The position numbers and the translations under genes are program-made. A stretch of 64,000 nt of DNA from Leucoraja erinacea (lineage: Eukaryota), in NCBI RefSeq assembly GCF_028641065.1, contig NC_073400.1, forward strand, positions 31,992,001-32,056,000. The letters run 5' to 3'. The notes beneath the pieces are model-generated. The model saw only the letters and a list, made by a program, of their open reading frames with translations. It did no database searches and was not told the DNA's origin. Shown here piece by piece: positions 3,116 to 49,411 of the stretch (position 1 is the first letter of the stretch; each line of letters starts with the position of its first letter).

Positions 3116-3625
3116 TCAATCCATTAACAGCCAGGTCTCTTCTTCACACTTCCCATAATTATAAGTGGTCCAACGGCAGGAATATATCGCCTCATCGTCC
3201 TCTTGTGCCTGTGTAAGGACCAACGAGGCGTCCCGATGCATGATGACGTTTTGATACACGAACCACCGATGGACATCAGACCTTTGATATTTCGCAAAGG
3301 TCCTAAATGTGGCAATGGAAACACCATCTTTACTCCACGAAACAGAGCCCAGTGCACCGTAATCTTTGGATATTTTACAGTACAGCGTTACAGAATTACC
3401 CGGAGATGCAATGATCACACTATGTCTAGTTAGGAGAGGCTGACCTAGCCTGCCCTGGCAGTCTGGAAACCGATCTTCATTGACCTGCCGAGGCTCCCGT
3501 GCGTTCCACCCGGGCAAGTTTGCTTCCTCTCCCCATTCTCTGGAGATCGGACCTGTTCCAGTTGCGGAGACTTGCCACACCATCTCCACAAGGACCATGA
3601 ATCCTATCCATCTCTGCAGCCCCAT
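3116..3625 (-). CDS. Predicted secreted single V-set immunoglobulin-domain protein (169 aa, single coding exon)
   Basis: Acceptor ttcacccacag at 3630-3631, then good Kozak AACATGG and a hydrophobic leader MGLQRWIGFMVLVEMVWQVSA. V-set hallmarks: GNSVTLYC, VSWSK, DASLVL, EDDEAIYSC. Stop falls directly after the G strand, with no TM segment. Confidence 0.75.
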   Translation of the reverse strand: MGLQRWIGFMVLVEMVWQVSATGTGPISREWGEEANLPGWNAREPRQVNEDRFPDCQGRLGQPLLTRHSVIIASPGNSVTLYCKISKDYGALGSVSWSKDGVSIATFRTFAKYQRSDVHRWFVYQNVIMHRDASLVLTQAQEDDEAIYSCRWTTYNYGKCEEETWLLMD

Positions 3626-3759
3626 GTTCCTGTGGGTGAAACAATGGGTCACCTTATTGCAACTCAGTAGGATTCATGATGACATTCCCTGAAGCTGCTG
3701 CCACCACACTGGGCAATGTCGCTGTGCAGCTTCTACAGCTCCCGCCTGGTTTAGTTTAA

Positions 3760-6970: not shown

Positions 6971-7218
6971 TTAAGGCCAGTTGCAACATTTACAGGATAA
7001 ATCGAAGACTAATCCAGTGGCACAGCTCTTCAGGTAGGTCCGACCATTGGCGCACTGGTAGAACTTGTTCTTGTCCTTGGGATCAGCGAAGGTACCGTTG
7101 GCTTTGCCCTTACAGAAGCCACTGCCTCCACCACCGCTGCTGCCACCGCCTCCACCACCACTAGGGGCATCAGTAGGTGGAACCGCCGGCGCCAATGTTG
7201 TCTTGGATGGGACGCAAG
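6971..7218 (-). CDS. chia: chia exon 11 (linker + CBM14)
   Basis: [13 protein letters not shown]...FYQC...[18 protein letters not shown]. Confidence 0.93.
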
Positions 7219-13200: not shown

Positions 13201-16200
13201 CATAGTCAGGATCGAACCTGGGTCTCTGTTGCTGTAAGCGCTGTAAGGCGGCAACTCTACCGCTGTGCCACACACTATTGAAAGGATTCTTTCGTAAAAT
13301 TATGTTCTTTTACTGTTTGGCAATCAATATTCTATATTGTTCAAATTGCAAACTGCGCTGTTTAATAATACTACTGAAACAGTTCACTGTAAAATTATCC
13401 CCTCAATATTTATCTCTGTGTATATCATTACCAAACACACCCACTGTTCACGTCAGACACATGAAACTGCAGGTGCCAGTTTACTAAAAGAAAAGACACA
13501 AAGCGCTGGAGTAAATCAGCGGGTCAGGCAGCATCTCTAGAGAACATGGATAGGTGACGATTCGGGTCAAGCCCCTTCTTCAGGCTGAGTTACTGAAGAG
13601 TTACTCCAGCACTTTGTGTCTTTCAATATTAATTCCATATCACAGTCAATTGGAAAATAACTTTTTTTAATCTAATGCTAACGTGAAAAGTTTCCATCTT
13701 ACTTCTGGGTGCCAAAGTTCCAGCCTCCAATGGACAGCAGAGTCTTGAGGTTTGCATTCCTTAAAAAATGGACAAAATGTGGTTTTAGAATGATGTTTAG
13801 AACAACAAAACATTTTCAGAACTGCTCAGGAACTTCTGTTTTTTTCGCCCCTTTGGTGTTACGTTTAGTTGAGGGGATTTGCCTTAGTCTGGATCTCAAG
13901 GGGGTCACAGAAAACGAGGTGCAAGTTCATGCAACAAGCAAGGCTTCATAAGCAATGGGCCAGTCTCACTATGTGGGCTGAAGGGCCTATTTCCTCAATG
14001 ATTTTGGTGAATGTCCAATATGTCCAATAGCTTTCTCCTGAATATCCCCCTAAACCAAGTCACCTTTCAGACAGGGGAGGTGGATGAGATGAGAAAACCT
14101 TCAACAAATGGATGTGTAACAGGGTCATGTCAAAGACCCCGCTGACCATCGATCACCCGTTCACACCAGTGCTATTTCATCCCACTTTCTCATCCACTCC
14201 CTATGCACTTGGGGCAAATTGTAGAGGCCAATTAATCTAGAAACCCTTTGGAATGTGGGAGAAAACCGGTAATCCAGAGAAAACCCTCACGGTCTTATGG
14301 CGAACATGCAAACTCCACACAAACAGTGCCTGTGGCGTCGCGAGGCAGTGGCTCTACCCGCTGCGCCACTGTGCTGCCCGGTACTTACAACAGATGGAAT
14401 CTTGCCACATACTCTTCCAAACGATAATAAACTAAACTAAACTAAATTAACTGTGGAATATGGATTTGGGGAATATCCAATACAGTGACTGGTTAGCACA
14501 CAACAAAAACCTTTCACTGTACCTCTGTACATGTGACAATGAACTAAACTGGACAATGTAAACATCGCAACAATGCCCGGCATTTGAGAAACAAGGTTAG
14601 TATTTATTCAGCGACTGTACTTGTTCTTCAGGCTGTTGATCTCCTTGTAGAGTTTTGGGTCATTCCATTCGTAGGTGGCGATCTGGTTGCTCCTCATTCC
14701 AGCGAAGGCGTAGATGATGTGTGTGCAGAGGCAAGGGTCCACGCTCTGGGGCATGTATTTACCCTCTCCTGGTCTGTACTGTGCCCAGTTGGTGAAGTAA
14801 CATACCAGCCTGTAGGCAGAGCCTGGGCAAGGGAGAGACAGGGTGGTCAGGACAATGCCTCTGTGGCACTCACACAAAGCAAAGCAAAGCAAGGCTGCAA
14901 ATGCACAAAGACTCACCCAGTTGCAGGCAGGCCAGTAAAACCACCGCTGGAACAGAAAACAGAGAACAGCGTGTTAGGATTATGACAAACTGTAATAAAT
15001 CAGGGGTTACGGCTGAACAATGGTCGGCATGGACTCCGTGGGCCGAAGGGCCTTGTTTCCATACTGTATCTCAAAACTAAACTTTTCCTATCCCATGTAC
15101 CTGTCCAAATTTCTTTTAAATGTTATTAAATGTTAAATGTCAACAAAATAGAGAGCATACAGAGGAGATTTACTAGAATGTTGCCTGGGTTTCAGCAACT
15201 AAGTTACAGAGAAAGGTTGAACAAGTTAGGGCTTTATTCTTTGGAGCGCAGAAGGTTAAGGGGGGACTTGATAGAGGTTTTTAAAATGATCAGAGGGATA
15301 GACAGAGTTGACGTGGATAAGCTTTTCCCACTGAGAGTAGGGAAGATTCAAACAAGGGGACATGACTTGAGAATTAAGGGACTGAAGTTTAGGGGTAACA
15401 TGAGGGGGAACTTCTTTACTCAGAGAGTGGTGGCTGTGTGGAATGAGCTTCCAGTGAAGGTGGTGGAGGCAGGTTCGATTTTATCATTAAAAAATAAATT
15501 GGATAGTTATATGGACGGGAAGGGAATGGAGGGTTATGGTCTGAGCGCAGGTAGATGGGACTAGGGGAGAATATGTGTTCGACACGGACTAGAAGGGTCG
15601 AGATGGCCTGTTTCCGTGCTGTAAATTGTTATATGGTTATATGGTTATTATACTTGCCTCATCTACCTCCTCTGGCAGATCATTCCATATACTCACCACC
15701 CTCTGGGCAACAGGCTAGAGTCATAGTCATAGTCACACAGCGCAGAAACAGGCCCTTTGGCCCAATTTATCCATGCTGACCATCTAAGCTTGTGCCAGTT
15801 GCCCCTGGGTTCACCTTTAAATCTTTGCCCTCTCACCTTCAGTGCCAATGCCCCTGTAGTTTTAGACTCGCCTTCCCTGGAGAAAGGCAGAGACCATCCT
15901 TCATATCTCTGCCCCTCGTGACCTTCTAAACGTCTTAAGAAGTCAAACTTCAACCTCCATCACTCAGGGGGCTCCACTCCATTGCTAGTGTTGGGACTGA
16001 AGGCTTGGGAGCAGAAGGTGGGGACACGGGAGAGTAGGAACATCATCTCCACAGAGTTCCAGCAACCTTCAACTGAAGATGGACACAGAGTGCTGGAGTA
16101 ACTCAGCGGGTCAGGCAGCATTTATGGAGCTAAGGAAATAGGCAACGTTTCGGGCCGAAACCCTTCCGGCCCGAAATGTTGCCTATTTCCAGAAGGGTTT

Positions 16201-32607: not shown

Positions 32608-32632
32608 ATGGTAAAGATCATCTTCTGCGCTG
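32608..32632 (+). CDS. chitinase-like exon 1 (MVKIIFCA)
   Basis: 25 nt; AAGATGG Kozak and G|gtaag donor, same layout as chia exon 1. Confidence 0.75.
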
Positions 32633-35600
32633 GTAAGAATGACATTCAACTATATATCTGAACAATCAGAAGCTCGGTTAATGGCCTTAAACCTTGCAAA
32701 CATGATGGATTTTTTAATCAATTTCTTGAACTATCCTGCACAACTCTAATCCTACCCAACCAATCACTACGAACCACACCTTGCGCTACTGTGGACTTGT
32801 TTTCTCATTGCGTATTCTCGCCCCAATGTCTTCAGATTTATTTTTCCAGTCTTTTTATTTTTCACCATCTTGTAGAGTGCTCCAGTTTTCTCCCACATGC
32901 CAAAGATGTGCGGGTTTGCAGGTTAATCGGCCTTGGTATATTGTCTCTAGTGTGTGGGGAGCCGGTGCAAAAGTGGGAAAACATAGAACTATTGCGAACC
33001 GTTGATCGATGGTCGGCGTGGACTCGGTGGGCCACAGAGTTTCCATGATATATCTTTCAATCCATTCAATTTATACCTCATTTATGTGCAATTCATCTAA
33101 TGTTTATATATGTTTTTGTCTGTTGTCTGAGTCCAAGTTTTTCTATATTTTGTTTCTATTATTTCAGTGGGATTCCTGCTGTTGTTACAAGCATACAATG
33201 GTAAGCAGCATGCACTGAATGTATCCCATACCAACACCATGAATATTTATGCCGTCATCGGTCAAAGTTAATCAAATAGCTGTCGTTTGTGGCAGAGTGA
33301 AAATCTCAAATACAGGTGTTGATAGCAATTTACTGTAGATCACAGTGAATGGCGGTGCTAGCTCGAAGGGCCAAATGGCCTCCTCCTGCACCTATTTTCT
33401 ATGTTTCTACGTTAATCATTGTACGAAAATACTTTCATTTATTGAGCACAATACTGGGGGTGGGGAGATTGCAACCTTCACGTGGTCCGCCCTGTTTCGA
33501 TTAATGCAATCAATCCGACGGGCACAGTCAAATAAGATCAAATAGAACAAGTTGTCCGACAACTTTAGGCTGTGCACACCATACGCAAGGGGATGAAGAA
33601 GAAGCACAAAGGTACACAAAATTGCTGGAGAAATTCAGCGGGTGCAGCAGCATCTATGGAGCGAAGGAAATAGGCAACGTTTCCGGCCGAAACCCTTCTT
33701 CAGACTGAATTAAGAAGAAGCACAATACTGGAGAACACAGATAGGTGACGATTTGGTGTAAGATTATTCTTCGGAATGAGCTTTGAAGCTGGGTCTCGAC
33801 CTATCCATGTTCTCCAGAAATGATGCCTGACCCGCTGGGTTACTCCAGCACTTTGTCTCTTTTTGTGTAAACCAGCATCTGCAGTTCTTTGTTTCTGCTT
33901 TCATTTACACAAAGGCTATCTGCCAGTAGAAAATGCTTCCATTTCGAAGCTTCAAATGGGTTTTCTAATTGTATTTGATAAAAAAATCAACTGACAACTT
34001 TTTTTAAACCAGTTTTAAGCCAGGACTACAAGATAGTTTGTTACTACACAAACTGGGCACATAAACGAGGAAACTGCAAGTTCCTACCAGAAGATATCAA
34101 CCCCAAGTTATGTACACATCTGGTCTATGCCTTCGCTGTTATTGGCAAGAACCATGAAATGGTCCCACAGCAGACAGAGGATGAAAGCCTCTACGAGTCG
34201 TTTAATAATCTGAAAAAACGGTACGTGAATTTACGAGACCTTGCAATGATTGTTAACTTAAATGTTTAATTCCACTGCAAATCTCTTCACAAGAAACTAT
34301 CACAATCAGTTGAGTGCAGGGGGATGAGGGGTGATCTCATTGAGGTGGATAAGATTATGTGAGGAATAGAGATGCACAGAGTCTCTTGCCGAGAGTGGTG
34401 GAATCGAGGACCAGAGGACAAATGTTTAAAGTGAAGGGGGAAAGATTTAATAGGAAGCTGAGGGGTAACTTCCTCACACAAAGGGTGGTGGGTGCATGGA
34501 ACAAGCTGCCAGAGGAGGTAGTTGAGGCAGGCACTATCCCAACATTTAAGAAGCAGTTGGACAGGTGCATGGATAGGACAGGTTTAGAGGGATGTGGACA
34601 AAGTGCGGGCAGGTGGGACTAGAGTGGCTGGGACATGTTGGCCGGTGTGGGCAGTTTGGGCCGAAGGGCCTGCTTCTGCACTGTATCACTCTATGTCTAT
34701 CTCACTTTTTGTTTAAATGAGGAATTGGTTTTCAAAATCTATGCAGGAAATTACCATCAGCTTAATATTAAATATATGTATGAACATATTGTACTGTGCA
34801 GAAATGAGTCTAAAATAATGAGAGGAAATCTCTCACGAGAAAGGTTTCCGTGGTAACCATTAAGTGTCCTGTTAAAACAGTTAAGAGTTCAATACTGAAA
34901 CTAATTAGTTAGTGTTGGCAAATAGAACTTTTTTTTTTCATAATTCACAATTGCATTAAACCACTGTGGATTTATCCATCTTTAGTCATTTCCAATTCCC
35001 AAGCCTCCTTTAGTTTAGTTTGGTTTAGAGATATAGCGTGGAAACAGGCCCTTCGGCCCACCGAGTCTGCACCGACCAGCAATTCCCACGCATTAAGACT
35101 ACCTTACCTATACACACACTAGGGACAGTTTACACTTAAACCAAGCCAATTAACCTACAAACCTGTAAATCTTTGGAGTGCGGGAGGAAACCGAAGATCT
35201 CGAAGAAAACCCACGCAGGTCACGGGGAGAACATACAAACACCATGCAGACAGCACCCATAGTCAGGATCGAACCCGTGTCTCTGGAGCTGCAAAAATCT
35301 GTAAGACAGTGCGGCCCAAAATTCTGATTTATTCAATTACTTAAATTTAAATTTTGTACTGGCTATAGTGGGACTTGAACTCATATCCCTGGATCAATAA
35401 TCCAGCTCCCAGTCCACTCATTTAACTGTTCTCCCCGTGACCATGTGGGTTTCCTCCTCGTGCTCCGGTTTCCTCCCACTCCAAAGACACGCAGGCTTGT
35501 AGATTGAAGTCGGGTTTCGGCCCGAAACGTTGCCTATTTCCTTCGCTCCATAGATGCTGCTGCACCCGCTGAGTTTCTCCAGCAATTTTGTGTACCTCAG

Positions 35601-38600
35601 GCTTGTAGATTAATTGGCTTCTATAAATTGTCCCCAGTGTGTGGGATAGAACAAGTGTACGGGGTGATCGTTGGTCTGAGCAGACTCGGTGGGCCGAAGG
35701 GCCTGTTCCCACGCTATATGCCGAATGGCCTACTCCTGCACCTAATTTCTATGTTTCTATGTTTCTATATCTCTAAAACTAAATAGATATGACGAATGTA
35801 CAAATATGCAGTCTGTATGGACTCCATGTAGATGGGGTTTACGTGTGTGCTTGTGTTATCCGTCTTAAATGGAATCTAAAAGAGTAACTTTACCCATCAG
35901 CGTGTTATTTATTGGGTAAAGGACATGGAAACTGTAGCTTCAGACGGAGGCTGTTCCAGCTACCTTGTGTTGTTACTTCACAGCACTTCAACGTGGGCTG
36001 GGCCATAGAAAGCACTTCAGAGAATTGTTGTACTGACCTCCAAAAATGAAAAGTTGTTGATGGAGTCAGATTTATTTTTCATGCCTTTGTGCTTTTTAAA
36101 AAAAAAAATAATGTCCTCTGATTTCCACAGAAACCCAAACTTACGAACACTCTTATCCATTGGAGGCTGGAATTTCGGAACTGAAAAGTAAGGCTCTTTC
36201 TTGAATGAAATTTGAGAGAGAGCGCTGCCTTACAGCGCTGGACACACGGGTTCGATCCCGACCGAAAGTGTTGTCCATGTGGAGTTTGCACGTTCTCCAT
36301 GTGACCATGTAGATTTTCTCCGGGGACTCAAGTTTCCTCCCTCATCTCAAAGACATGTTGGATTAAAGGATACTCGGCCCTCTGTAAATTGCCCCTGGCG
36401 TGTAGGGAGTGGATGAGAAAGTGGGATCACATAGAACTCGTGATCGATAATCGGCCTGGACTCGGTGGGCCGAGGGGACTCTTTCCATTTTAGTATCTCT
36501 AAATTAAACTGATGACTGGGTCAATGACCACAAGAAAATACAGAACTATCCCAGATTGTGTGCCAGTAGATATGTATGCAATCAAACCTGTCTGCTTAAC
36601 TGAGTAAAAGAGTTTAATAGATCACACTGAACTTTCGAAGACAGATAAACTGGATGTTTATTTTTATCACGTGATAAAATCCAATCATATCAGATAACAA
36701 ATGAACGCATCTATCCATGTACATATTGGTTTACAAAATTAATCCTTCAAAATGCCTAACTTTCATGGATTTGAAGTTTATTACATGGGTTTCTGTAATA
36801 AATGATCTGGAGTGAAACACAAAGCACTGGAGGAACTCAGCAGGTCAGGCAGCATCTGTGGAGGAAATGGTCAAACAATTCACACAAATTCATTCATGTC
36901 ATACACAAGTACTGCAAGAACATAAAACATAGGAGTAGAATTAGGCCATTCAGCCCATTGGGTGTACAATAGTGATGGAAGGAACTGCAGATGCTGGTTT
37001 ACAACAAAGATACACACAAAATGCTGGAGTAACTCAGCAGAACAGGCAGCATCTCTGGAGGGAAGGAATGGATGAGGTTTCAGGTCGAAACATCGCCCAT
37101 TCCTTCTCTCCAGAGATGCCGCCTGTGTTACTCCAGCTTTGTGTCTATCCATAGTTCGACAGGTTGAGCAAAGAGAAAAATACCAGGGTGCAGAATATAG
37201 TTTTTCAGCATTGTAACGTAACAGTTCCAGAGAAAAAGTCAACTGTAGCAATGAGGTAGGTTGGAAAATGGGGACAGTGCCCCAGCTTATGGAAGAAAAT
37301 AAGATCAGAGTCTGGTAGTGACCCCTTTCAAGCTTCCGTATCATCTGCCCGACATTCAATCTCGTACAATAGGTGGAGCAAAGGGGGAGATAGAGTTCAG
37401 AATAGTTCTCAACATTGTAGCGCATCAGTTCCAGGGACAAAGTCCAATGTCCGCAATGGGGTTGAGATGAATCGGACAGTACTCTAGTTTATGAATGGAC
37501 CATTCAGAAGCGTAATAACAGAGGGGAAGAAGCCATTCCTCAGTCTGGGAGTGGTGATATCAGGGTTATATCACTGGTATATTTGGGTCACCTCAGTGGA
37601 TAACCGGTGAATGGAAAATAACAACCACTAAACCTCACTCCAGGGTCCCGACTCGAAACGTGGTCTGTCCATTCCCTCCACGGATGCTGCCAGACCCGCT
37701 GAGTTACTCCAGCACTTTGTGTTTCTCTCCAGATCGTTTATTACAGAAATAAGAAACTTCAAATACTCAAAGTCTGGCATTTTGAAGGATTAGTTTTGTG
37801 GAATAGCAGCGTACCGAGCAGCCATCAGGGGCCGTGTGTGTTGTCAGGTGGGGAATATTTCACTATTATCCATCTGCTGAGTTTGGAAAACTCAATTTTG
37901 AAAGGACTTGTAAAATTAAAAAAAGACACAAAGTGGCGAAGAAACCATATAACCATATAACAATTACAGCACGGAAACAGGCCATCTCGGCCCTACAAGT
38001 CCATGCCGAACAAATTTTGTTCCCCTTAGTCCCACCTGCCTGCACTCGTACCATAACCCTCCATTCCCTTCTCATCCATATGCCTATCCAATTTATTTTT
38101 AAATGATACCAATGAACCTGCCTCCACCACTTCCACTGGGAGCTCATTCCACACCGCCACCACTCTCTGCGTAAAGAAGTTCCCCCTCATATTACCCCTA
38201 AACTTCTGTCCCTTAATGTAGCGAAACGTAGTGAGTCTCTCAGCAACATGGAATGGTGATGTTTCGGGTTGGGATCCTTCTTCAGACGTTACAGTGGTGG
38301 GGGGGGGGGGGGGGGGGCTGGATGAGGGTAGTGGGGCATGACAAAGCCTGGCAAGTGCTAGGCAGGAAAATTCTGGAGTAATTCAGCGAGTCAGGAAGCA
38401 TCTGAGGCGAATATGGATAAGTGACATCTTGGTTTGGACACTTCTACAGATGGATTGTTGTGAGGGGAGAGTGATGGGTGGATACAGGTGAAGGCATCCA
38501 GGACAGAAAGGTCAGTAGGGGATGAGAAGGGGAGTTAAAATGGTTAGCAACCAGGAACTCCAGCAGAGCCAAGAGTTCTAGTAAAAAATAAAACATCCTT

Positions 38601-41600
38601 CTCAGCCATTTATCACAAGGCCAGAAGCTTTATGCATGAAGATTATGCTGACTACCTCCTTCCCAAACATATTTCATGTCAGGTTCACCGCCATGGTTTC
38701 CAGTAAAGAAACTCGCTTACTATTCATTACGTCTGCGATCGAGCTTCTGAGGAAAGCGGAGTTTGATGGTTTAGACCTGCACTGGGAGTTCCCCGGCTTT
38801 AACCGCAGCCCACACGAAGACAAGCAACGCTACACTGACTTGGTCCAGGTGAGTGTAGACTTGGTTTATACTCTCTAGAATTTAGAAGATTGAGAGGGGA
38901 TCTTATAGAAACTTACAAAATTCTTAAGGGGTTGGACAGGCTAGATGCAGGAAGATTGTTCCCGATGTTAGGGAAGTCCAGGACAAGGGGTCACAGCTTA
39001 AGGATAAAGGGGAAATCCTTTAAAACCGAGATGAGAAGAACTTTTTTCACACAGAGAGTGGTGAATCTCTGGAACTCTCTGCCACAGAGGGTAGTTGAGG
39101 CCAGTTCATTGGCTATATTTAAGAGGGAGTTAGATGTGGCCCTTGTGGCTAAGGGGATCAGGGATCAGGGGTATGGAGAGAAGGCAGGTACGGGATACTG
39201 AGTTGGATGATCAGCCATGATCATATTGAATGGCGGTGCAGGCTCGAAGGGCCGAATGGCCTACTCCTGCACCTAATTTCTATGTTTCTATGCGAGCTGA
39301 ACGCATCACAAATCTCGAGACACAAGGAACTTGTCTGGACAAAGTTTTTACACAGAGGGTGGTGGGTGCCTGCAACGTGCTGCCAGGGGTGGTGGTGGAG
39401 GCAGACACGGCAGTAACGTTCAATAAAGAATCTGGAGAGAAACACAAAGTGCTGGAGTAACTCAGAGGGACAGGCAGCATCTGTGGAGGGAACGGACAGC
39501 CGACATTTCGGGTCGCCACCCAGAAGTGAGGTTGTAAAACGTTCAATTCATGACAGGCACATGGATATGCTGGGAATGGTGGGATATGGATCACGTTCAG
39601 GCAGAGATTAGTTTAACTTGGTATAGTGTCGGCACTGAAATACTGATAGATTTCCAAATGGAATCGGGATGCTAAAAGGTGGAGCAGTTTCCAAATGGAG
39701 CAAAGAGTTTCCATATACTCTTCACTCAGAGGGTGGTGGGCAAAGATTCTACAGCGAGCAAGGTCGACCACTCGACGAGAAAGACTGCAGTACCATCATG
39801 GGCAAATTCGTGGGTAATTTTCGGCCCCATTTCCGTAACCGGCTTCCGTCTCCGCACCAAAGATCCCGTAGCGGAGCAAAGATACTAGTGCGGAGATGGA
39901 AGCCGGTTACGGAAACATCCTCGTAAAAATAAAAGTTCTTTAGCAAAAATCTTCTCCTCATTTTCAGAATATTAATTTATTAACACAAACTGTTCCCCCG
40001 CAACGTTGATTACACTGCGAGTCGGGTCGGGTTACTGGAATGGATGAAAAAAAGGCCCACGTTCCGCTCCGTTGCATACTACATGTCAGCCCATTGCATT
40101 TAGCAGGAGTGGTCTATCTTGCTCCGCTATAGGATCATTGGTGGTGGGTATATGGAATGAGCTGCCAAAGGAGGTAGTTGAGGCAGGGACTATAACATTA
40201 TTTAAAAGATATTGGGAGAGGTACATGGCTAAAAAAGGTTTAGAGGGATGTGTGGGACCAGCGTAGATGGGGCATCTTAGTCGGCATGGGCAAGTTGGAC
40301 TGAAGGGCCTGTTTCCACAATGTCTGACCCTCCGACTCAGAGTGGAACTTCAGTGACAAACAGCAAAGAGTCACCACACTCCCGCCCCATCTAGCCTTCT
40401 GGTCAGCTGAAACAAAGCATCTTTCCCAAGACCTTCGGCCTCTCCTTCACCCTGGGGCTGGCGTATTCCACAGGAAATAATGCAACCTAGTCATAATCAT
40501 TAATGATGAGAAACATTCCTATACATTCGCTCCTCTGTCACCAGGCAACTGAGCCGGCCTCTCACCAGCTAGAGAGTGGTCCTGACCTCCCAACCTCCTC
40601 GTTAGAGACCTTTGAACGATCTTTAATCGGACTTTACCTTGCAGTAGATGTTATGCCCTTTATCCTGTATCTGTACACTGTGGACGGCTTGATTTTAATC
40701 ACCTATAGTCTAATCAATGATTGGATAGCACAGAAAAACCACTTCATTGTACCTCAGTAAACATGACCATAATAAACTAAACTAAACCGTTTGAAATCTC
40801 AATTCCATTTTGGAAATCCATCCTTATTCCCATCTGTATCTGTTCTTGTGTATGGCTTGATTGGATTCAGGTATAGTGTTATGTAATTCAATGGAATAGT
40901 AATGACCATGTTCTTGGTTCTTGGTTTCTTGGTCCTCCAAAATATTCCAAATGGAATTTAAACTGGAGGTGGTGAAGGGAGGGATTAAGCCAGAAAGGGT
41001 TATTGGGAAGAAAGAGCTACTTTAAATGTAGTTGCATCTGGTTGGGTAACTATAGTAGGGTGGAGATTATTCCATGCTTTAATTGTGCGGGGGAAGAACG
41101 AATTGCTGTATACATCTGTCTTTGTAGCTGGGATCACAAATTGGATCGAATGCCCTCGTCTTCTCCATGTTAATTATATATTCATTAAGTCCATGCCATT
41201 TGTAATCTGTCGTTCATCAGATATCATTGATGTCATCTGCCTGACAAACTCTTCACTATTTTATTAACTAATAGGAACTCCAGGAAGAATTTATAAAGGA
41301 ATCAAACGAGACCAACAAACCACGATTGCTACTTTCTGCTGTTGTAGCATCTGGAATAAGAAACATTCAAGCAGGTTATGAAATAGAGAAGATTTCAGAG
41401 TACGTTGGGAGTTTATTTTGTACCTGGTGCGGCTTTAAGCTTTGAAGATGTTCATCGTAAAACTGAAAACAATGAGGAAAGACACAAAGTGATGAGTAAA
41501 TCATCGGGTCAGGCAGCATCTCAAGAGAGCATGGATATGTTATGATTTGATCGAGACCCTTCCTCAGACTGATGAAGGATCCCATCCTGAAATGTCACCT

Positions 41601-44600
41601 ATCCATGTTCACCACAGATGCTGCCCGACCTGCTGAGTGGCTCCAACACTGTCCTTGGTAAACCAGCATCTTCAGTTCCTTGTTTCTACTGAAAATAATA
41701 ACCACGGCTTTGAATAAGGGCCAAGGCGTTACAAAACTATCCAATGAACACTTCAAACTGGGCAGGAGACACAAAGACATTTGCAACCAAGGAAAAATAA
41801 TTGAGAACAAACTTATAAACCACTATGGTGGCAATATTAGTAATGCAAGAGGAGAGGGAGTGATGTGGTGAAAGGACCAGTGAAATGGAGACACAAGGAA
41901 CTGAAGATGCTGCGATCTTGATTAAAACACAAAGTGCTGGAGGAAGTCAGCACATCAGGCAGCATCTGCGGAGGGAATAGATGTTTTGGGTCAAGACCCT
42001 TCTTCAAACCAGTGAACTGGTTGGGTTGGCAATAACTGGCTAGATGGATCTATACGGATCAATTACATTCTAATTTCCTATATAAGATTGACCAGAAGAG
42101 CCAAGGAACTGCAGAAGCTGGAATCTTGAAGGGTTTCGGCCCGAAACGTCGCCTATTTCCTTCGCTCCATAGATGCTGCTGCACCCGCTGAGTTTCTCCA
42201 ACAATTTTGTGTACCTTGGAGGAACTCAGTTGGACAGACAGCATCTGTGGAGGGAATGGGCAAGCAATGTTTTGGGTTGAGACAGTCTGAAGAACATCAT
42301 CTGTCCATTCCCTCTACAGATGCTGCCTGGCCCGCTGAGTGCCTCCAGCACTTATGTTTTGATGAAGATTGAAAGATAACCGTGGTAAATGCTATTGTCA
42401 ATCTTTGCAGCCGTGATATCAATGCCTGCAATAGCAACCTCCTTCAGTTCCATTCTCAACTAGCTGTTGTTTTTTGCAGACACATGGACTTCATCGGTGT
42501 GATGACCTACGAGTTCCATGGTCCATGGGATCTAAAAACTGGACCTAACAGTCCACTGTACAAGAGCTCTGATGACTATAATGATGACAGATACTTCAAT
42601 GTAGTATGTACTGACATCTTTCATGATTTCAATTTACATCATTTCTCCAGTTCTCTAAAGTTTAGTTTAGTTTAGAGATACAGCGTGGGAGGTACAGTGA
42701 GGCCCTTCAGATCGCTATGTCCATGCTTGACTGGCGATACGCTAGTTCTAGCCTACACACGAAGGACAATTAACCTACAAACCTGCACGTCTTTGGAATG
42801 TGGGAGAAAAATCACGCGGATAACATACGAACTCCATACAGACAGCACCCATAGTCAGGATAGAAACCGGGTCTCTGGTGCTGTCAGGCAGCAACTCTAT
42901 CGTTGCGCTACTTTGCCAATGTACATTTGGGAACACAGAGAATGAATGAATGAACGAATACTTTATTGCCACATGACAAGTCACAGTGAAGTTATTTGTT
43001 TCTGCATACGCCAGGTATGCAAAGAGTGGCCACATAAAGTGCAGCAACAAAGTTACAAAGTATCCCGCCCCACGCCCTCCTTTGTTCTCTCCAAAATGCT
43101 GCAGCTGGAATGTGTGGTGGGATCGGGACAAAGCCTGGAAAGTGATAGGTGGATACAGTTGAGGGGAGGCTTACTGGTTACTACATGGTTGGACAAAAGC
43201 CCAGAGATGAAAAGACAAAAAGTGTGAGATAAGGAGATAAGCATAGAAGAGTCAAGAATTGTGAAGCCAGAGGAAGAAATATATTTGAAATGGGAGAAGG
43301 AAGAGGAGAAATGGGTGTGTATCCAGGCGGGGCACAGGGAAGAGAGATGGGGTGGTGAAAAAAAAATGGAAGTGGGTGTTAGTAGACTAGTTACCTGAAA
43401 TTGGAAGTCAATATTCATTGCATAGGGTTGGAAGATACCCAGGCAAAGTCAGTTCCAATGTAATCCTTTCTCGTAGGAGTTTGCAACAAATTACTGGAAG
43501 CAAAATGGAGCTCCGGCAGAAAAGCTCTTGGTGGGATTCCCAACGTACGGACGGACATTTACTCTCTGCTCTGCCGACAACAAGCCTGGTTCTGCAGCGT
43601 GTGGACCTGGCACTCCGGGGAACTGCAGCAAAGCCGCTGGCATTTTAGCATACTCTGAGGTACGGTGTGACTGCAGTTTGACCCTACTATGAAAGGGAAT
43701 GCACTTCAATTATCACTACTAATTGCCACCATCACTAGCAATCGACACATTAGGCCCCTCTTGGAAATATGTAGATTTATCATAGCAACATCTGCATGAA
43801 AAGACATTTGGGCAGGTACATGGATAGGAGAGCTGGGAGGGATATGGGCCAAACGCGGGCAGGTGGGACTAGTGTAGTTACATAGAAACATAGAAATTAG
43901 GTGCAGGAGTAGGCCATTCGGCCCTTAGAGCCTGCACCGCCATTCAATATGATCATGGCTGATCATCCAACTCAGTATCCCGTACCTGCCTTCTCTCCAT
44001 ACCCTCTGATCCCCTTGGCCACAAGGGCCACATCTAACTCCCTCTTAAATATAGCCAATGAACTGGCCTCAACTACCCTCTGTGGCAGAGAGTTCCAGAG
44101 ATTCACCACTCTCTGTGTGAAAAAAGTTCTCCTCATCTCGTTATCCCTCATCATCTCCTCATCATCTAGTTGGGACATGTTGGTCGGTAAGTTGGGCCAA
44201 AAGGGCCTGTTTCCACTCTATGATTTACTTATCACAGTGACACAGTTCTCATAGAATCATAATTACACAGCACAGATACAGCCCTATCGGCCCAACCTGC
44301 CTATGCCAACCAGAAGCCCCATCTACGCCAATCCTGCCTGCCCGCCTTTGGCCCATATCCCAGTAAACATTTCCTATCCATGTACCTGTCCAAATGTCTT
44401 TGAAATCTTGTTATTGTGTCTGCCTCAACTACCTCCGCTAGCAATTCGTTTAATTTACCCACCACCCTGTGTGTGAACATTTCCAAACCCTCTATCTTCT
44501 TCCATAAACCAATTGTGTATCCAGGGAGCAAGCTCACTCTGGCTTCCATGCGATCTAACCTTATAAAATGGAAATGTTATCATTATAAATTTACCAAAAC

Positions 44601-47600
44601 AATTATCATAACAGTACCTCTCCACCATCGAAGGGATTGACAGGAGGCTTTGTCTCAAAAACGCAGTCAGCATCATCAGAGACTCTCATTTCAACCCTGC
44701 CGTCGGGAAGAAGGTACAGGAATCTGAAAAACCATGACCTCCAGGTTCAGGAACAGCTTCATCCCAACAAACATCAGGCTCTTGAACACTGCAACCACCG
44801 ACTAAACTAAGAATAACATATTGTCTTGGTTACAGGAAATTTTTGCTTTTGTTTTTACACAAATATTGCCATTTTTTAGTTTATTATGTTATCTATGAGT
44901 ACTGTGTTTACAGACCTGATATGTTTCTGCAAGTAAGAAGGGTCTCGGCCCGAAAGCATCACCTATCCATGTTCTATAGAGATGCTGCCTGACCTGTTGA
45001 GTTCCTCCAGCACTCTCTGAAACGTCACCTATCCATGTTCTCCACAGATGCTGCCGGACCCGCTGAGATACTCCAACAAGCTGTGTCATTTTTAGATTTT
45101 CATTGTTCCATTGTTGGTATTTATGAAAATTAAACACTCTCGAATCTTGAATGTCCAGTGAGGTGGAGATAAAATAACAACTATCAACAAAATAACCAGG
45201 AACATTTACATCCTCCCTGTGGAATTCTAGTAATATTAAAGAGGTCACCCCTCGTAATACATTTCCAAGGGGACACGGGCTGCATTTATGTAGCATCTTT
45301 CACTCACCGTGAAGCACTTTGAAGCAATGATAAAGGTCTTTGCTATTATTACAGGTGTGTGACTTTTTGAAAGGAGCCCATAAAGAATGGATTGAGGAAC
45401 AGGAGATTCCATACGCATACAAAGATGATGAGTGGGTTTCTTATGACAATTTGAGGAGCTTTGAGAAGAAGGTATGTATTTTTTTGGAACATTTATTGCA
45501 TGTTCCTGATATATCTTGTATAATGGATTGCAGATGTGCAGTTTACATGGTCTCCTTTTAACTGTAGGGAATTCTTCCAAGTGCTCCAGTTACATAGAAC
45601 AGCACAGCACCAGACCCTTCAGCCCACAATCTCCGTGCTGGACATACCAAGTTAAACTCTCTCTGCCTGCACATTATTTTCCTCCCGTATCTGAAAAATT
45701 GCTGCATGAGGTGGATTGGCCACTGTAGTTAGCTACCATATAGGTGGCAGGCAGGTGGTGATCAGTATGCATGTGTGACTCAATGGGCCAAATGGCCTTT
45801 TTTTTTGTATGTCATGAGAAAACCAAGAGAAAATGAGTCCAGCTGGGCTATATAATGTGCACGGCAGGTGGTTTCAGTTGGCCAAGATATTTATTTCTTG
45901 AGAATGTGAAACCAAAACTAGTTTCAATGTTGATAACATTAAGTAATTCTCAAGAAATATATCCATCATTCTTGGACTTGTGTTAAAAATTATAATTTAT
46001 CCAAATGTTTTTCTTTGCAAGGATTGAAAAAATGTGGCCATTTATTTATTGCTATACAGCAACGGGTGAACAGGTGAAACCCCTCACCTGTGTTCACCTA
46101 TCACCATGTTCTGTCCTGCCCCTCATCTTTTCCCACTTTTGTTCCTGCCCCCACCCCCCCGTGCAATATGTCCGATAAAGGGTGCCGAACCGATACGTCA
46201 CCAGAGATGCTGCCTGACCCGCTGAGTTACTCCAGCACTTTGTGTCTTTCTTTAGTACAAAACAAGCATTTGTAGTTCCTCGTTATTGCCCTTTAAGAGG
46301 ATGTTCCCACTGTGGCGGGAAGTTTTGTCTCAGGCAAGGTTAAACATAGTTGCAGAAGCAAGGTCAGAAGATGGAATGAAGATTGAGATCAACCATCCAC
46401 TCGCTGAACATGTGGACTGGACATGTTTGTTACAGAGCCTCGTGAATTCATGCTTAATTTATGTAGTTTATGTATAAATTATGTTTTGTGCATTGCCTGA
46501 ATCTATGTAACTGTGATGCTGCTGCAAGCAAGATTTTCATTGCACCTCTACCTCACTGTATTTGTATCAGTATTGGTTAAATCTATCTGATCTCCAGGCT
46601 ACCACCTAAACCAGTCCGATTTCTCGGCTACTAAACATTTTAACCGCCCCTCCTCCCATTCCCACACTGACATTTCTATCCTGGGCCTCCTCCATTGTCA
46701 GAGTGAGGCCCAGCACAAATTGGAGGAACACCACCTCATATTTCGCTTGGACAGCTTTCACTCCAGCGGTACGAACATTGACTTCTCTAACTTCAAGTAA
46801 CCTTGCTTTCCCTCTTTCTCCATCCCTCCCTCTTCCCAGTTCTCCGACAGTCTTACCGTCACCCATTCCTTCTCTCCAGAGATGCTGCCTGTCCCGCTGA
46901 GTTACCGCAGCATTTTGTGTGTATCATTGGTTTATTATTAGAGATATACAAAATGTAGGAGTAACTCAGCAGGACAGACAATATCTCTGGAGAGAAGGAA
47001 TGGGTGACGTTTCGGACGTGTACTGAGATGCAGAGAAAAGCTTTGTTAATGTGACAATAAGCAGAACGCGACTTGACTTTTTGATTTTAGAGATAACAGC
47101 ACGGAAACAGGCCCTTCCACTCACCGGTTCTGCGCTGACCAACGATCACCCCGTACACTAGCGCTATCCTACACACTAAGGACAATTTTACAATTTACAG
47201 AAGGCAATTAACCTACATCCTTGGAGTGAGGAAACCAGAGCAGCCAGAGAAATACCACACGGTCTCAGGGACAAGGTACAAACGCCTAACAAACAGCACC
47301 CGTGGTCAGGATCGATCCCAGCTCTCTGGTGCTGTAAAGCAGCAACTCTACCATTGCACCATTTTGCAGCCGTATTGCTTAGGTAATCGGACAGCAATCA
47401 AGAACAATGTTTCTCTGGCAGTTTGTTTTGTGGCTTTTGGGGCTAATGTAAGCATCTAGAAATAAGGAACTGCACGAACTCAAGGAAATGAACCTTGGTC
47501 TCCATGTGACCTTGCATGGGGTCGGTCTTGTAAATCTGCAGCTAAATATTAATTATTAAATAATCTGGATTAGCGAGATGATTTGCAATCTAGGATACCT

Positions 47601-49411
47601 ATTAAATGTTAAATTATTTTCAGGTGGAATGGTTGAAAAATAACAGCTTTGGGGGTGCAATGGTATGGACAATCGATATGGATGATTATGAAGGTACTTC
47701 CTGTAACCAAGGACAATTCCCCCTTATTAATAAACTCAAGGTTATGCTTTCGTCAGGTTCTGGACCCACGGATGAATCGTCAGGTAACTAAATTACATTT
47801 CCATTTGCATTTCAAATCAAGATATTTACATTTTCTATCAAATATTTAAGCATTAATTATGCCATTATAATCATGCTGTCTACAAAACCTTTCTGGGTAT
47901 GCAATTTTGAAAATAATGGACATTTAATAAAATTAAAGAGTTTATTATAAGTTAATGCAGGAGGGAGACATGAGATGGAAGATCACAGCACTACAGGTGC
48001 TTGGAGTTCTGAAACAATAACAGAAAGTCGTCGCAGATCAGCTAGCATTTCAGATCTTGCTCCATTTATCAGAATCAGGAAAGTGACAAAACAAGAGAGG
48101 AGACAAAATAAACTGCAGATGCTGGATTCTCGAGTAAGACAGAAAGTGCTGAAGGAACTCAGTGGGTCAGACAGCATCTGTGGGTCTGTCCATTCCCTCA
48201 ACAGATGCTGCCTGTCCCACTGAGTTACTCCCCAAAAAGGGAGAACACAAGTTAGTTTTCGGCAGAAGACAAGCTCGGAGAGAGATGGAAATATCTTGGC
48301 AACCAAATGAGTTAATACAGCAGTTTGAAGCACATTTTGCTTCCTTGTCAATATGGGCAATATCGTTAATAGGTAGGCTCTGGGATATGCACAACAAGCC
48401 CGGGGGAAGTGGGAGGTTCACTTGCTGTTCACGTTTAGAGATACAGCGTGGAAACAGACCCTTTGGCAAACAGAGTCCAAGCTGACCAGCGATCATCCTG
48501 TACACTAGTTCTGCGTCCTACACAATTAACCGACAAACCTGCATGTGGGAGGAAACTGGAGAGCCCAGAGGAACCTTAGTGTGAATGGGTGATCAGTGGT
48601 CGACATGGACTTGATGGGCCAAAGGGTCTGCTTCCATGATGGATCCTTCAATCAACAGTGGAAATCCCAAATCTTTTTTCCCCCACCTACATGTGGTAGT
48701 GTGGGAATTTCCTGCAGCTCCCGGAACACAGGTTCAGACCAGGAGAGGCATCTTGAAACATTATCATCAGTGAGCTTTGCACCATCATCATGCCGATAAT
48801 GGATTAAGGTTACGCGTGAAGATATCGGTGTAGAGTTAATCATGTTGCTGTTCGTACTTTCAGAGACAACACCACTGCCCATTTCTTCATCAGATTCACA
48901 GGTATCCGACCCCTGCCCCAATCTGGAATTTTGCGGAGGTAAAAAGGATGGTAACTATGCAGTGGAGTGTACTGCGGACAGTTTCTATCAGTGTACCAAC
49001 AACGACACCGAGATTCTAACGTGCTCCAGAGGTACTTCATACAACGCGGGCAGAGACAAATGTGTCTGGCCACCCAGGTTAATTCCAGCCATCAATTTGG
49101 CAGACAGTAACTTTTGCAAAACCAAGCTCGACGGTGCATATGCAATCCCGGTTCCCTCGTACTACAAATGCAAAGCTGGGCAGATGCGCGTGAAGAAGTG
49201 CTCCTCTGATCTACTCTACGATGCAGTCAGCAAGAAATGCATCAGTGCAAACACATTTAGTGACTACGATGTGTCCTTCTGCAGTAGTAATGAAGATGGG
49301 ACCTATCCCATCCTTGGCAGACCAAACAAATACTATCACTGCCTGAATAAGGATACCAATGTAGGGAGCTGTCCCAAGGGGAGCTTCTACAATAATTTCT
49401 GTAAATGCTGA
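32608..49411 (+). CDS. GH18 chitinase-like protein (CHIA paralog) with Asp-to-His catalytic substitution and three tandem CBM14-like domains; 11 coding exons, about 581 aa
   Basis: Exons 32608-32632, 33168-33200, 34013-34220, 36131-36187, 38683-38848, 41275-41399, 42480-42603, 43477-43659, 45355-45471, 47624-47783, 48864-49411. All are GT-AG with the same phases as the minus-strand chia and form a 1746-nt open frame. AATAAA at 49435-49440. Confidence 0.9.
33168..33200 (+). CDS. chitinase-like exon 2 (signal peptide)
   Basis: VGFLLLLQAYN; tttcag/gtaagc boundaries. Confidence 0.8.
34013..34220 (+). CDS. chitinase-like exon 3
   Basis: DYKIVCYYTNWAHKRGNCKFLPEDINPKLCTHLVYAFA. Confidence 0.92.
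36131..36187 (+). CDS. chitinase-like exon 4
   Basis: [18 protein letters not shown]; 57 nt. Confidence 0.92.
38683..38848 (+). CDS. chitinase-like exon 5 (variant motif FDGLDLHWEFP)
   Basis: 166 nt; CAC (His) at 38780-38782. Confidence 0.93.
38870..39291 (+). mobile_element. CR1 LINE 3' end inserted about 20 nt downstream of the exon 5 donor
   Basis: 'LRGDLIETYKILKGLDRLD...' to the TTTCTATG tail. Confidence 0.85.
39741..40140. mobile_element. hAT-type MITE (400 bp)
   Basis: 8-bp TSD GTGGTGGG at 39733-39740 and 40141-40148; imperfect ~33-bp TIRs CAAAGAT...GACCACTC / GAGTGGTC...ATCATTG; splits a CR1 fragment. Confidence 0.8.
41275..41399 (+). CDS. chitinase-like exon 6
   Basis: ELQEEFIKES...PRLLLSAVVASG...AGYEI; 125 nt. 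Confidence 0.9.
42480..42603 (+). CDS. chitinase-like exon 7
   Basis: HMDFIGVMTYEFHGPW...TGPNSPLY; 124 nt. Confidence 0.92.
43477..43659 (+). CDS. chitinase-like exon 8
   Basis: EFATNYWKQNGAPAEKLLVGFPTYGRTF...LAYSE; 183 nt. Confidence 0.92.
45355..45471 (+). CDS. chitinase-like exon 9
   Basis: VCDFLKG...PYAYKDDEWVSYDN; 117 nt. Confidence 0.92.
46590..46925 (+). mobile_element. Penelope-like element 3' end (GIY-YIG C-terminus)
   Basis: 'HFN...SHSHTDISILGLLHCQSEAQHKLEEHHLIFRLDSFHSSGTNIDFSNFK*'. Confidence 0.8.
47624..47783 (+). CDS. chitinase-like exon 10
   Basis: VEWLKNNSFGGAMVWTIDMDDY...; donor G|gtaact (weaker alternative donor after 47756). Confidence 0.88.
48864..49411 (+). CDS. chitinase-like exon 11: S/T linker + 3 CBM14-like repeats
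   Basis: Three FC..K/E.DG.Y...Y.C...C...Y...C units at 48929-49069, 49112-49240 and 49277-49408. Confidence 0.9.

What the first reader, a model, noticed from the sequence alone, without database searches (positions are those of the whole stretch)
38762..42515. GH18 paralog with an unusual DxxDxHxE catalytic motif and YD->YE: candidate independent chi-lectin or altered-chemistry enzyme
Seen: FDGLDLHWEFP (His codon CAC at 38780-38782, one base from GAC) and MTYEFHG in an otherwise fully open 11-exon gene. The catalytic Glu and the cleft aromatics in TNW, GGW, GPW, PTY and MVW are kept; those of QYR and EWND are lost. Established: the last Asp of DxxDxDxE (D138 in CHIT1/AMCase, D142 in Serratia ChiB) is central to substrate-assisted catalysis, and D213 supports the -1 site. 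Mammalian chi-lectins (CHI3L1, CHI3L2, OVGP1, Ym1) lose the Glu and have no CBM14. Inference: a separately evolved chondrichthyan pseudo-chitinase, or a low-hydrolysis, transglycosylating or pH-shifted enzyme.
Basis: partly seen in the sequence, partly recalled or inferred. Interest (0 to 1): 0.85.

Follow-up and report, generated by a model that had tools for sequence, protein, structure and literature searches.

The report
Shark-and-ray chitinase with altered catalytic site
This skate gene encodes a secreted chitinase-family protein in which two otherwise invariant active-site aspartates have become histidine and glutamate; the same pair is fixed in all 11 other sharks and rays examined but not in a chimaera, so it is an old, selected change of unknown chemistry, not an error.

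Summary
FDGLDLHWEFP (His codon CAC, 38780-38782) and MTYEFHG (Glu codon GAG, 42511-42513) lie in an open 11-exon, 581-aa gene (32608-49411, + strand) encoding a signal peptide, a GH18 domain and three CBM14 domains. His aligns without gaps to D138 of human AMCase/CHIT1, and Glu to D213.

It is neither an error nor a private allele. An independent read-contig matches the His exon exactly. All 11 orthologues found, from sharks and rays, carry DLHWE plus M[T/S]YE.

The sister protein in the chimaera Callorhinchus has the same GH18+3xCBM14 build but keeps DLDWE and MTYD. The pair was therefore fixed on the elasmobranch stem. Since then the domain has been more conserved among sharks than a canonical paralogue.

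The catalytic Glu and the core -1/+1/+2 subsite residues are all kept. The distal aromatics Y34 and W71 were lost earlier.

My best reading is a chitin-binding protein with strongly lowered or altered hydrolysis. A rewired but active enzyme is not excluded. Expression was not shown, and dN/dS could not be run.

No paper in the library describes DxxDxHxE. The D-to-His change also recurs independently in insects, a snail and salamanders.

The scan had already noted the CBM14 exon and the chitinase cluster on this genome.

The parts
32608..32632 (+). Coding exon 1: start codon and first part of the signal peptide (MVKIIFCA + 1 base)
   Evidence: Found by ATG/hydrophobic/donor scan. Matches the N-terminus MVKVIFCA of the Rhinoraja orthologue P0156. 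Donor is gtaaga.
33168..33200 (+). Coding exon 2: 33-nt micro-exon, rest of the signal peptide (VGFLLLLQAYN)
   Evidence: AG/GT-flanked and in phase. Peptide matches P0156 VGFLLLLQAYS.
34013..34220 (+). Coding exon 3: start of the GH18 domain (DYKIVCYYTNWAHKRGNCKF...). W31 kept, Y34 replaced by K, W71 lost.
   Evidence: Pfam GH18 E 2.5e-8; alignment; splice sites.
36131..36187 (+). Coding exon 4: [18 protein letters not shown] (GGW: W99, N100)
38683..38848 (+). Coding exon 5: catalytic-motif exon, FDGLDLHWEFPGFNRSP
   Evidence: Pfam GH18 E 2.6e-11. Gapless alignment to AMCase/CHIT1. X1 contig covers 38600-38884 with 0 differences.
38780..38782 (+). CAC = His at the position of D138 of AMCase/CHIT1 (last Asp of DxxDxDxE)
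   Evidence: His in 12 of 12 elasmobranch sequences, Asp in 40 of 40 other vertebrate chitinases compared.
38786..38788 (+). GAG = catalytic Glu (E140), retained
   Evidence: Glu in 12 of 12 members of the clade.
38801..38809 (+). AAC CGC AGC = N-R-S, a possible N-glycosylation sequon made by clade-specific R145N and G146R just after the motif
   Evidence: N in 11 of 12 clade members; R/G in the chimaera and at least 93% of the others. Glycosylation itself is not shown.
41275..41399 (+). Coding exon 6 (ELQEEF...EKISE)
   Evidence: Donor gtacgt, phase fits exon 7.
42480..42603 (+). Coding exon 7: HMDFIGVMTYEFHGPW... (M210, Y212, E213, W218)
   Evidence: Pfam GH18 E 8.4e-9. PDB alignment puts E on the D of MTYD. 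X1 contig covers 42332-42681 with 1 unlisted difference.
42511..42513 (+). GAG = Glu at the position of D213
   Evidence: Glu in 12 of 12 elasmobranch sequences, Asp in 40 of 40 others.
43477..43659 (+). Coding exon 8 (FPTYGRTF: Y267, R269; three clade-specific Cys)
   Evidence: Pfam GH18.
45355..45471 (+). Coding exon 9 (VCDFLKGAHKEW...)
47624..47783 (+). Coding exon 10 (GGAMVWTIDMDD: W360) plus start of the linker. An alternative in-phase donor about 30 nt upstream was not excluded.
   Evidence: No RNA reads to decide between the donors.
48864..49411 (+). Coding exon 11: linker, three tandem CBM14 (peritrophin-A) domains, stop TGA at 49409-49411
   Evidence: Pfam CBM_14 E 5.4e-19, 3 stretches. 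Same three-domain build in P0156, P0007 and chimaera P0171.
6974..14862 (-). Neighbouring head-to-head canonical chitinase gene ([19 protein letters not shown], one CBM14). It is the CHIA-type comparison within the same window.
   Evidence: tblastn and ORF reading. Groups with amniote AMCase at 100/98.

Best explanation
Shown:
- The window (from a skate, 96% identical in the GH18 domain to Rhinoraja longicauda) carries an intact gene for a secreted GH18 protein with three C-terminal CBM14 chitin-binding domains.
- The gene belongs to a cartilaginous-fish lineage separate from CHIA and CHIT1.
- On the elasmobranch stem, after the split from chimaeras, the second catalytic Asp (D138) became His and D213 became Glu. 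A few other changes at conserved sites came with them (D47N, A95S, R145N, G146R, A186S, F300I, N331D).
- All of these have stayed fixed in sharks and rays under strong protein-level constraint.

Inferred:
- In GH18 enzymes, D138 polarises the acetamido group of the -1 sugar and stabilises the oxazolinium intermediate. Its replacement therefore most likely lowers hydrolysis strongly.
- E140 and the whole -1/+1/+2 pocket are kept, so GlcNAc-chain binding should be preserved.
- The protein then works mainly as a chitin or chito-oligosaccharide binder and cross-linker through its three CBM14 domains, with at most slow hydrolysis or transglycosylation.
- Its target could be dietary, microbial or the animal's own chitin.
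For: - The motif and the open 11-exon gene are confirmed.
- His aligns to D138 and Glu to D213 of solved AMCase/CHIT1 chains.
- The AlphaFold model of the 96%-identical orthologue superposes on AMCase at 1.2 A over 367 columns.
- All 11 orthologues, from nine elasmobranch orders by general taxonomy, have DLHWE plus M[T/S]YE. The chimaera sister has DLDWE/MTYD.
- Careful ML tree: His clade 100/99, His clade plus chimaera 100/100, long stems (0.37 and 0.21) and short inner branches.
- Shark-to-shark identity is 86-89% in this clade against 73-81% for a canonical paralogue in the same species pairs.
- Y27, W31, F58, W99, N100, D136, E140, M210, Y212, W218, Y267, R269 and W360 are invariant in the clade. 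Y34, W71 and E297 are lost.
- Only about ten clade-fixed changes fall at otherwise conserved sites, among them D138H, R145N, G146R and D213E.
- Three CBM14 domains are present.
- ChiB-D142N and ChiA-D313N, engineered at the equivalent Asp, bind tighter and transglycosylate more (PMC5505975).
- Mammalian lectins that lost D138 still bind chitin (PMC11190707).
- Skates and other cartilaginous fishes make chitin of their own (10.1101/687301).
Against: - No biochemical data exist for any DxxDxHxE GH18 in the searched library.
- The invariant retention of E140 and D136 for the whole history of the clade is more than a pure lectin needs, and mammalian chi-lectins lost the Glu. This favours some chemistry.
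- Neutral His could accept the acetamido N-H as Asn does, and the longer Glu213 could carry the lost negative charge, so activity may be substantial.
- No RNA cover of the exons was found in three RNA runs, so tissue and expression in this species are unknown.
- dN/dS could not be computed.
Confidence: 0.55

Rival explanations
1. A fully competent chitinase with a rewired catalytic centre. Neutral His138 orients the acetamido group, Glu213 reaches in to supply the negative charge, and E140 remains the acid/base. The result is a shifted pH profile or a preference for transglycosylation or remodelling over hydrolysis.
For: - E140, D136, Y212, M210 and all core subsite residues are invariant in 12 of 12 sequences.
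- The two substitutions arose on the same branch and are never separated.
- Glu at 213 was seen nowhere else among about 380 GH18 domains scanned, only in the 14 proteins of this clade.
- The clade evolves more slowly than a canonical paralogue.
Against: - Replacement of this Asp in studied GH18 enzymes strongly reduces hydrolysis (general knowledge; PMC5505975 reports the changed kinetics).
- Independent D-to-His lineages do not carry the Glu213 change, so the pairing is not a general rule.
- Protonated His would oppose the positively charged intermediate.
- The distal aromatic subsites are lost.
Confidence: 0.27
2. A lectin for a glycan other than chitin (for example a glycosaminoglycan). 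The GH18 cleft has been re-tuned and the CBM14 domains serve only as anchors.
For: - Loss of Y34, W71 and E297 changes the minus-side cleft.
- There are new Cys pairs and a possible N-glycan site next to the motif.
- Mammalian chi-lectins are reported to bind other ligands (general knowledge).
Against: - The residues that hold the -1 GlcNAc are all kept.
- Three CBM14 chitin-binding modules are conserved from the chimaera to skates.
Confidence: 0.1
3. Sequencing or assembly error, private allele, or a decaying pseudogene.
For: CAC is one base from GAC. No RNA reads were found on the exons in three runs.
Against: - An independent read-contig is identical over the His exon.
- His and Glu are present in all 11 other elasmobranch species.
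- The 581-aa frame is open with canonical splice sites.
- Conservation is higher than in a canonical paralogue.
Confidence: 0.01

Closest known systems
Acidic mammalian chitinase (CHIA) and chitotriosidase (CHIT1), e.g. PDB 3FXY/3FY1, 1HKK, 5HBF
   Same: GH18 (beta/alpha)8 fold with the alpha+beta insertion. About 53% identity in the GH18 domain. The orthologue model superposes at 1.2 A. The exon layout matches what I recall of CHIA. D136, E140, Y27, W31, W99, N100, M210, Y212, W218, Y267 and W360 are kept. There is a C-terminal CBM14.
   Different: D138 is His and D213 is Glu. Y34, W71 and E297 are lost. There are three CBM14 domains instead of one, four extra Cys, and it forms a separate clade. 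The true CHIA-type gene is the neighbour on the minus strand.
Callorhinchus milii chitinase V9KD90 (P0171)
   Same: Sister in the tree (100/100). Same GH18+3xCBM14 build, same extra Cys, same loss of Y34 and W71.
   Different: Keeps the canonical DLDWEYPGS and MTYDFHG. It therefore marks the state before the change.
Mammalian chi-lectins (CHI3L1/YKL-40, CHI3L2/YKL-39, OVGP1, Ym1)
   Same: GH18 proteins with a broken catalytic motif. YKL-40 and YKL-39 retain sugar binding (PMC11190707).
   Different: They lose the catalytic Glu (A138/L140 in YKL-40) and have no CBM14. This clade keeps Glu and carries three CBM14 domains, and it arose independently.
Engineered Serratia ChiB-D142N / ChiA-D313N
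   Same: Same catalytic Asp replaced while the Glu is kept. They show lower Km and more transglycosylation (PMC5505975).
   Different: Asn rather than His; bacterial enzymes; laboratory mutants with no compensating change at the D215/D213 position.
Other natural DxxDxHxE GH18 domains (Halyomorpha P0074, Rhynocoris P0371, Ladona P0015, Molorchus P0431, Babylonia P0092) and salamander DLHFQ proteins (P0056, P0057)
   Same: Independent D-to-His change at the same position.
   Different: None carries Glu at the D213 position. The salamander proteins also lost the catalytic Glu. All are uncharacterised, as far as the searched library shows.

Membership tests
GH18 (Pfam PF00704) | Significant match to the GH18 profile | tested here: met
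   Exon-wise hits above the curated cut-off on exons 3, 5, 7 and 8. Full-length orthologues score 328-346 bits.
GH18 (Pfam PF00704) | (beta/alpha)8 fold like solved chitinases | tested here: met
   Model of the 96%-identical orthologue P0156 against 3FY1/2YBU: rmsd 1.2 A, TM 0.94-0.95 on the target. The window's own spliced protein was not folded.
Active GH18 chitinases | Complete DxxDxDxE motif | tested here: not met
   DGLDLHWE: the last Asp is His.
Active GH18 chitinases | Catalytic acid Glu (E140) | tested here: met
   GAG at 38786-38788; invariant in the clade.
Active GH18 chitinases | Tyr-Asp pair (Y212-D213) at the -1 subsite | tested here: not met
   Tyr kept, Asp replaced by Glu.
Active GH18 chitinases | Chitin hydrolysis | not testable with these tools
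   Needs recombinant protein.
CHIA / CHIT1 orthology groups | Falls inside the clade in a tree | tested here: not met
   Separate cartilaginous-fish clade (100/100). The neighbour gene, not this one, joins amniote AMCase (100/98).
Vertebrate chi-lectins (CHI3L1, CHI3L2, OVGP1, Ym1) | Loss of the catalytic Glu | tested here: not met
   Glu kept.
Vertebrate chi-lectins (CHI3L1, CHI3L2, OVGP1, Ym1) | No CBM14 | tested here: not met
   Three CBM14 domains.
Vertebrate chi-lectins (CHI3L1, CHI3L2, OVGP1, Ym1) | No hydrolytic activity but sugar binding | not testable with these tools
   Inferred only.
CBM14 / peritrophin-A | Profile match and six-Cys pattern | tested here: met
   PF01607 E 5.4e-19, 3 stretches. 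Six Cys counted in the first repeat of the translation.

The most novel reading that the evidence does not exclude
His138 with Glu213 is a working alternative catalytic centre of GH18. A neutral His replaces the Asp that steers the acetamido group, and the lengthened carboxylate at 213 takes over charge stabilisation. This would give elasmobranchs a dedicated chitin-remodelling or transglycosylating enzyme, held on its polymer by three CBM14 domains. It might act on the animals' own chitin, for example the gel of the ampullae of Lorenzini or a gut lining.
Probability: 0.2. Interest if true: 0.8.

Novelty: new variant of a known kind. Interest (0 to 1): 0.55.

Why it matters
The second Asp of DxxDxDxE is a textbook essential residue of substrate-assisted catalysis in GH18. 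Here nature replaced it with His, kept the catalytic Glu, changed the neighbouring D213 to Glu on the same branch, and then held all of this fixed across sharks and rays. By general knowledge that is on the order of 250-300 million years.

A chimaera sister protein preserves the ancestral state in the same domain build. This gives a clean natural pair for testing three things: what His can do at this position, whether D213E compensates, and how chitinase-like proteins arise without losing the Glu.

It also adds a multi-CBM14 chitin binder to a group of animals now known to make their own chitin.

The sequences themselves are already in public databases, annotated only as 'acidic mammalian chitinase-like'.

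Tried and rejected
- **RNA evidence.** The single read-laying run gave zero depth on the bins 38600-38770 and 43559-43700, and at most about 0.8 on the bins holding exons 7 and 8 (42362-42532, 43388-43558), in one raw oligo-dT RNA run and two presumed RNA contig sets. No exon-exon joints were seen and the intron signal is all interspersed repeats. Expression and the splice model are therefore unconfirmed, and only about 5% of the raw run was read.
- **dN/dS and synteny in other species.** Protein-level conservation was used instead.
- **Literature.** Searches for the motif strings and for D-to-His mutants of the catalytic Asp found nothing relevant. Papers on ampullae of Lorenzini gel name no chitinase-like protein. 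The chitin-barrier paper does not cover cartilaginous fishes.
- **A general His138/Glu213 coupling.** Rejected, because independent DxxDxHxE lineages keep Asp at 213.
- **Error, private allele or pseudogene.** Rejected.
- **Side-chain geometry of His/Glu.** Not available, because the structure tool returns no coordinates.
- **Joined model.** The joined spliced protein was not given to any search, fold or look-up tool. Exons were searched one by one by reference, and the joined translation was used only inside scripts for alignment and trees. The Rhinoraja orthologue P0156 stood in for it in the fold.
Full report
**What is there**

Reading the window and six-frame scans show FDGLDLHWEFP at 38762-38794. 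The His codon CAC is at 38780-38782 and the catalytic Glu codon GAG at 38786-38788. MTYE lies at 42502-42513, with GAG at 42511-42513.

Around these I built an 11-exon coding model: 32608-32632, 33168-33200, 34013-34220, 36131-36187, 38683-38848, 41275-41399, 42480-42603, 43477-43659, 45355-45471, 47624-47783 and 48864-49411. Every intron has GT/AG, the phases fit, and the frame is open for 581 aa. The two small signal-peptide exons were fixed by their match to the N-terminus of the Rhinoraja orthologue. The donor of exon 10 has an in-phase alternative about 30 nt upstream that I could not decide between.

Searched exon by exon and by reference, Pfam gives GH18 on exons 3, 5, 7 and 8, and three CBM_14 hits on the last exon.

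The joined protein was never sent to a search, fold or look-up tool. It was used only in scripts.

**Which residues changed**

phmmer of the motif exon against PDB sequences aligns it without gaps to human AMCase and CHIT1. His sits on chain position 117 of 3FXY, which is D138 when the chain starts at residue 22. Exon 7 aligns MTYE on MTYD.

In a MAFFT alignment numbered on macaque AMCase, the window protein keeps Y27, W31, F58, G97, G98, W99, N100, D133, D136, E140, M210, Y212, W218, Y267, R269 and W360. It has K for Y34, T for W71, A for E297, H for D138 and E for D213.

**Not an error or a private allele**

A Logan contig assembled from DNA run X1 (same organism label, depth about 20, consistent with single copy) covers 38600-38884 with no difference. 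Another covers 42332-42681 with one difference whose place was not listed. X1 may be the sample the assembly came from, so this excludes an assembly slip rather than giving a second individual.

The stronger evidence is comparative. An HMMER scan of 1.84 billion representatives with the 55-aa motif exon returned three proteins with DLHWE plus MTYE. A search from one of them listed named orthologues ('acidic mammalian chitinase-like'):
- Sharks: Chiloscyllium, Rhincodon, Mustelus, Scyliorhinus, Heterodontus, Heptranchias, Pristiophorus.
- Batoids: Rhinoraja, Narcine, Pristis, Hypanus.

Every one has F[D/N]GLDLHWEYP and M[T/S]YEFHG.

The window protein is 95.7% identical to Rhinoraja longicauda over the GH18 domain, so the window comes from a skate.

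**When it happened**

The nearest relative outside elasmobranchs is Callorhinchus milii V9KD90. It is 64.5% identical to the window protein in the GH18 domain. It has the same three CBM14 domains, the same extra cysteines and the same loss of Y34 and W71. It keeps the canonical DLDWEYPGS and MTYDFHG.

A careful IQ-TREE analysis (58 rows, 370 columns, LG+C20) gives:
- the 12 His sequences as a clade, 100/99;
- that clade plus the chimaera, 100/100;
- stem lengths of 0.37 (whole lineage) and 0.21 (elasmobranch stem), with inner branches of only 0.01-0.09.

No bony-vertebrate sequence joins this lineage in my sample. The best non-chondrichthyan hits (lungfish, 58-59%) fall elsewhere.

The neighbouring minus-strand gene (6974-14862; [12 protein letters not shown], one CBM14) groups with amniote AMCase at 100/98.

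So D138H and D213E were fixed on the elasmobranch stem, after the split from chimaeras and before sharks and rays diverged.

**Constraint**

Among four shark genera, GH18-domain identity is 86-89% in the His clade. A canonical chitinase paralogue in the same or congeneric species shows 73-81%.

I compared the 12 clade members with 40 other vertebrate chitinases. Only ten positions carry a clade-fixed residue against a residue that is at least 85% conserved elsewhere: Y34K, D47N, A95S, D138H, R145N, G146R, A186S, D213E, F300I and N331D. D138 and D213 are 40 of 40 Asp in the others.

R145N plus G146R create an N-R-S sequon right after the motif. Whether it is glycosylated is unknown.

**Structure**

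The AlphaFold model of Rhinoraja P0156, built from a 46-sequence alignment, has mean pLDDT 81, with most of the GH18 core above 90 and a dip to 69 over residues 141-150, the HWEYPGFNRSP loop. It superposes on AMCase (3FY1, 2YBU) at 1.2 A over 367 columns with 55% identity, and on CHIT1. No coordinates are returned, so the geometry of His and Glu could not be examined.

**How unusual the motif is**

Among 367 fetched proteins (roughly 500 GH18 motif matches), DxDxE dominates with 425. There are 17 DxHxE matches, 14 of them from this clade. Glu at the D213 position occurs only in the 14 proteins of this clade.

Other D138 replacements with the Glu kept also occur:
- DLVWE in a second Heptranchias paralogue and in Umbra;
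- DLAWE repeated in a 5937-aa Esox protein;
- DLCWE in mites.

Independent DxxDxHxE domains exist in Halyomorpha, Rhynocoris, Ladona, Molorchus, an unnamed JGI protein and the snail Babylonia. Salamanders have DLHFQ. Within one arthropod group His and Asp alternate between orders. None of these has Glu at 213.

On the vertebrate tree, position 138 changes state four times: to His twice and to Val twice.

The library holds no paper with the motif strings or with D-to-His mutants of this Asp.

**Mechanism: shown versus inferred**

Established knowledge of GH18 (ChiB D142, CHIT1/AMCase D138) is that this Asp turns toward the Glu, hydrogen-bonds the acetamido N-H of the -1 sugar and stabilises the oxazolinium intermediate. 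D215/D213 supports the -1 site and tunes the pKa values.

ChiB-D142N and ChiA-D313N bind tighter and transglycosylate more (PMC5505975). Mammalian lectins that lost D138 and E140 can still bind chitin (PMC11190707).

From this I infer that hydrolysis is strongly lowered while binding at the core subsites is kept. With three CBM14 domains, the protein would act chiefly as a chitin binder or cross-linker, or as a slow or transglycosylating enzyme.

Against a pure lectin stands the unbroken retention of E140 and D136, together with the linked D213E. These fit a rewired but working centre, to which I give about a quarter of the weight.

Possible substrates are speculative. They include dietary or microbial chitin, or the animals' own chitin, which is documented in the ampullae of Lorenzini along with chitin synthase expression in little skate (10.1101/687301).

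**Expression**

The three RNA or presumed-RNA runs gave no usable cover of the exons and no splice joints. The depth seen lies on intron repeats. Expression in this species is therefore not shown. Only about 5% of the raw run was read and the tissue is unknown, so this is not evidence of silence.

**Verdict**

The sequences are public but unremarked in the searched literature. The thing is a new variant of a known kind, a GH18 chitinase-like protein. It offers an unusually clean evolutionary set-up for experiment: an ancestral-state sister protein, a canonical neighbour gene, and two linked active-site changes.

Earlier scan notes on this genome had already flagged the CBM14 exon, a 'chitin-barrier module' spanning this window and further chitinase paralogues upstream. 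I confirmed only the CBM14 count and the two genes in the window.

Noticed in passing
window 6974-14862 (- strand): A canonical chitinase gene ([19 protein letters not shown], one CBM14) lies head-to-head with the target, about 17.7 kb from its start codon. It groups with amniote AMCase (100/98) but on a long end branch (0.52).
   Followed up: partly
window 38789-38791: The window has Phe (TTC) after the catalytic Glu (WEFP), where all 11 orthologues, including the 96%-identical Rhinoraja, have Tyr (WEYP). This is a change private to this skate lineage at AMCase Y141, and the X1 contig confirms it.
   Followed up: partly
window exons 3 and 8 (34013-34220, 43477-43659): Four extra cysteines (GNCKF, TLCS, AACGP, GNCS) are shared by all elasmobranch orthologues and the chimaera sister but absent from other vertebrate chitinases. 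They may form two added disulfides.
   Followed up: no
P0346 (Heptranchias perlo), P0060 (Umbra pygmaea), P0001 (Esox lucius): Other fish GH18 proteins replace D138 but keep the Glu: DLVWE in a second shark paralogue and in Umbra, and at least six DLAWE GH18 repeats in a 5937-aa pike protein.
   Followed up: partly
P0056 (Pleurodeles), P0057 (Lissotriton): Salamander GH18 proteins carry DLHFQYP (His at 138 and Gln for the catalytic Glu). They sit on a very long stem (0.76) inside the amphibian/tetrapod chitinases and look like an independent chi-lectin.
   Followed up: partly
P0074, P0371, P0015, P0431, P0435, P0421 against P0372, P0394, P0406, P0412: Within one arthropod GH18 group the same position alternates between His (true bugs, dragonfly, a beetle) and Asp (stick insects, cockroaches, thrips). 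A planthopper has DLHWQ.
   Followed up: partly
window 38856-39625 and 42020-42360 (introns): Interspersed repeats in the introns draw summed contig depths up to 3.4e7 in the DNA run (1.8e6 to 3.4e7 across those bins) and thousands of reads in RNA runs. They swamp any read-laying on this gene, and they include an inverted pair joined as 'opposite strands' at 39442/41658.
   Followed up: no
same genome, upstream of the window (scan notes s1-876352, s1-876291) and window 3116-3629 (s1-877144): Earlier scan notes report a Glu-to-Gln chitinase paralogue about 119 kb upstream and secreted single V-type Ig genes inside the chitinase cluster. I did not check these.
   Followed up: no
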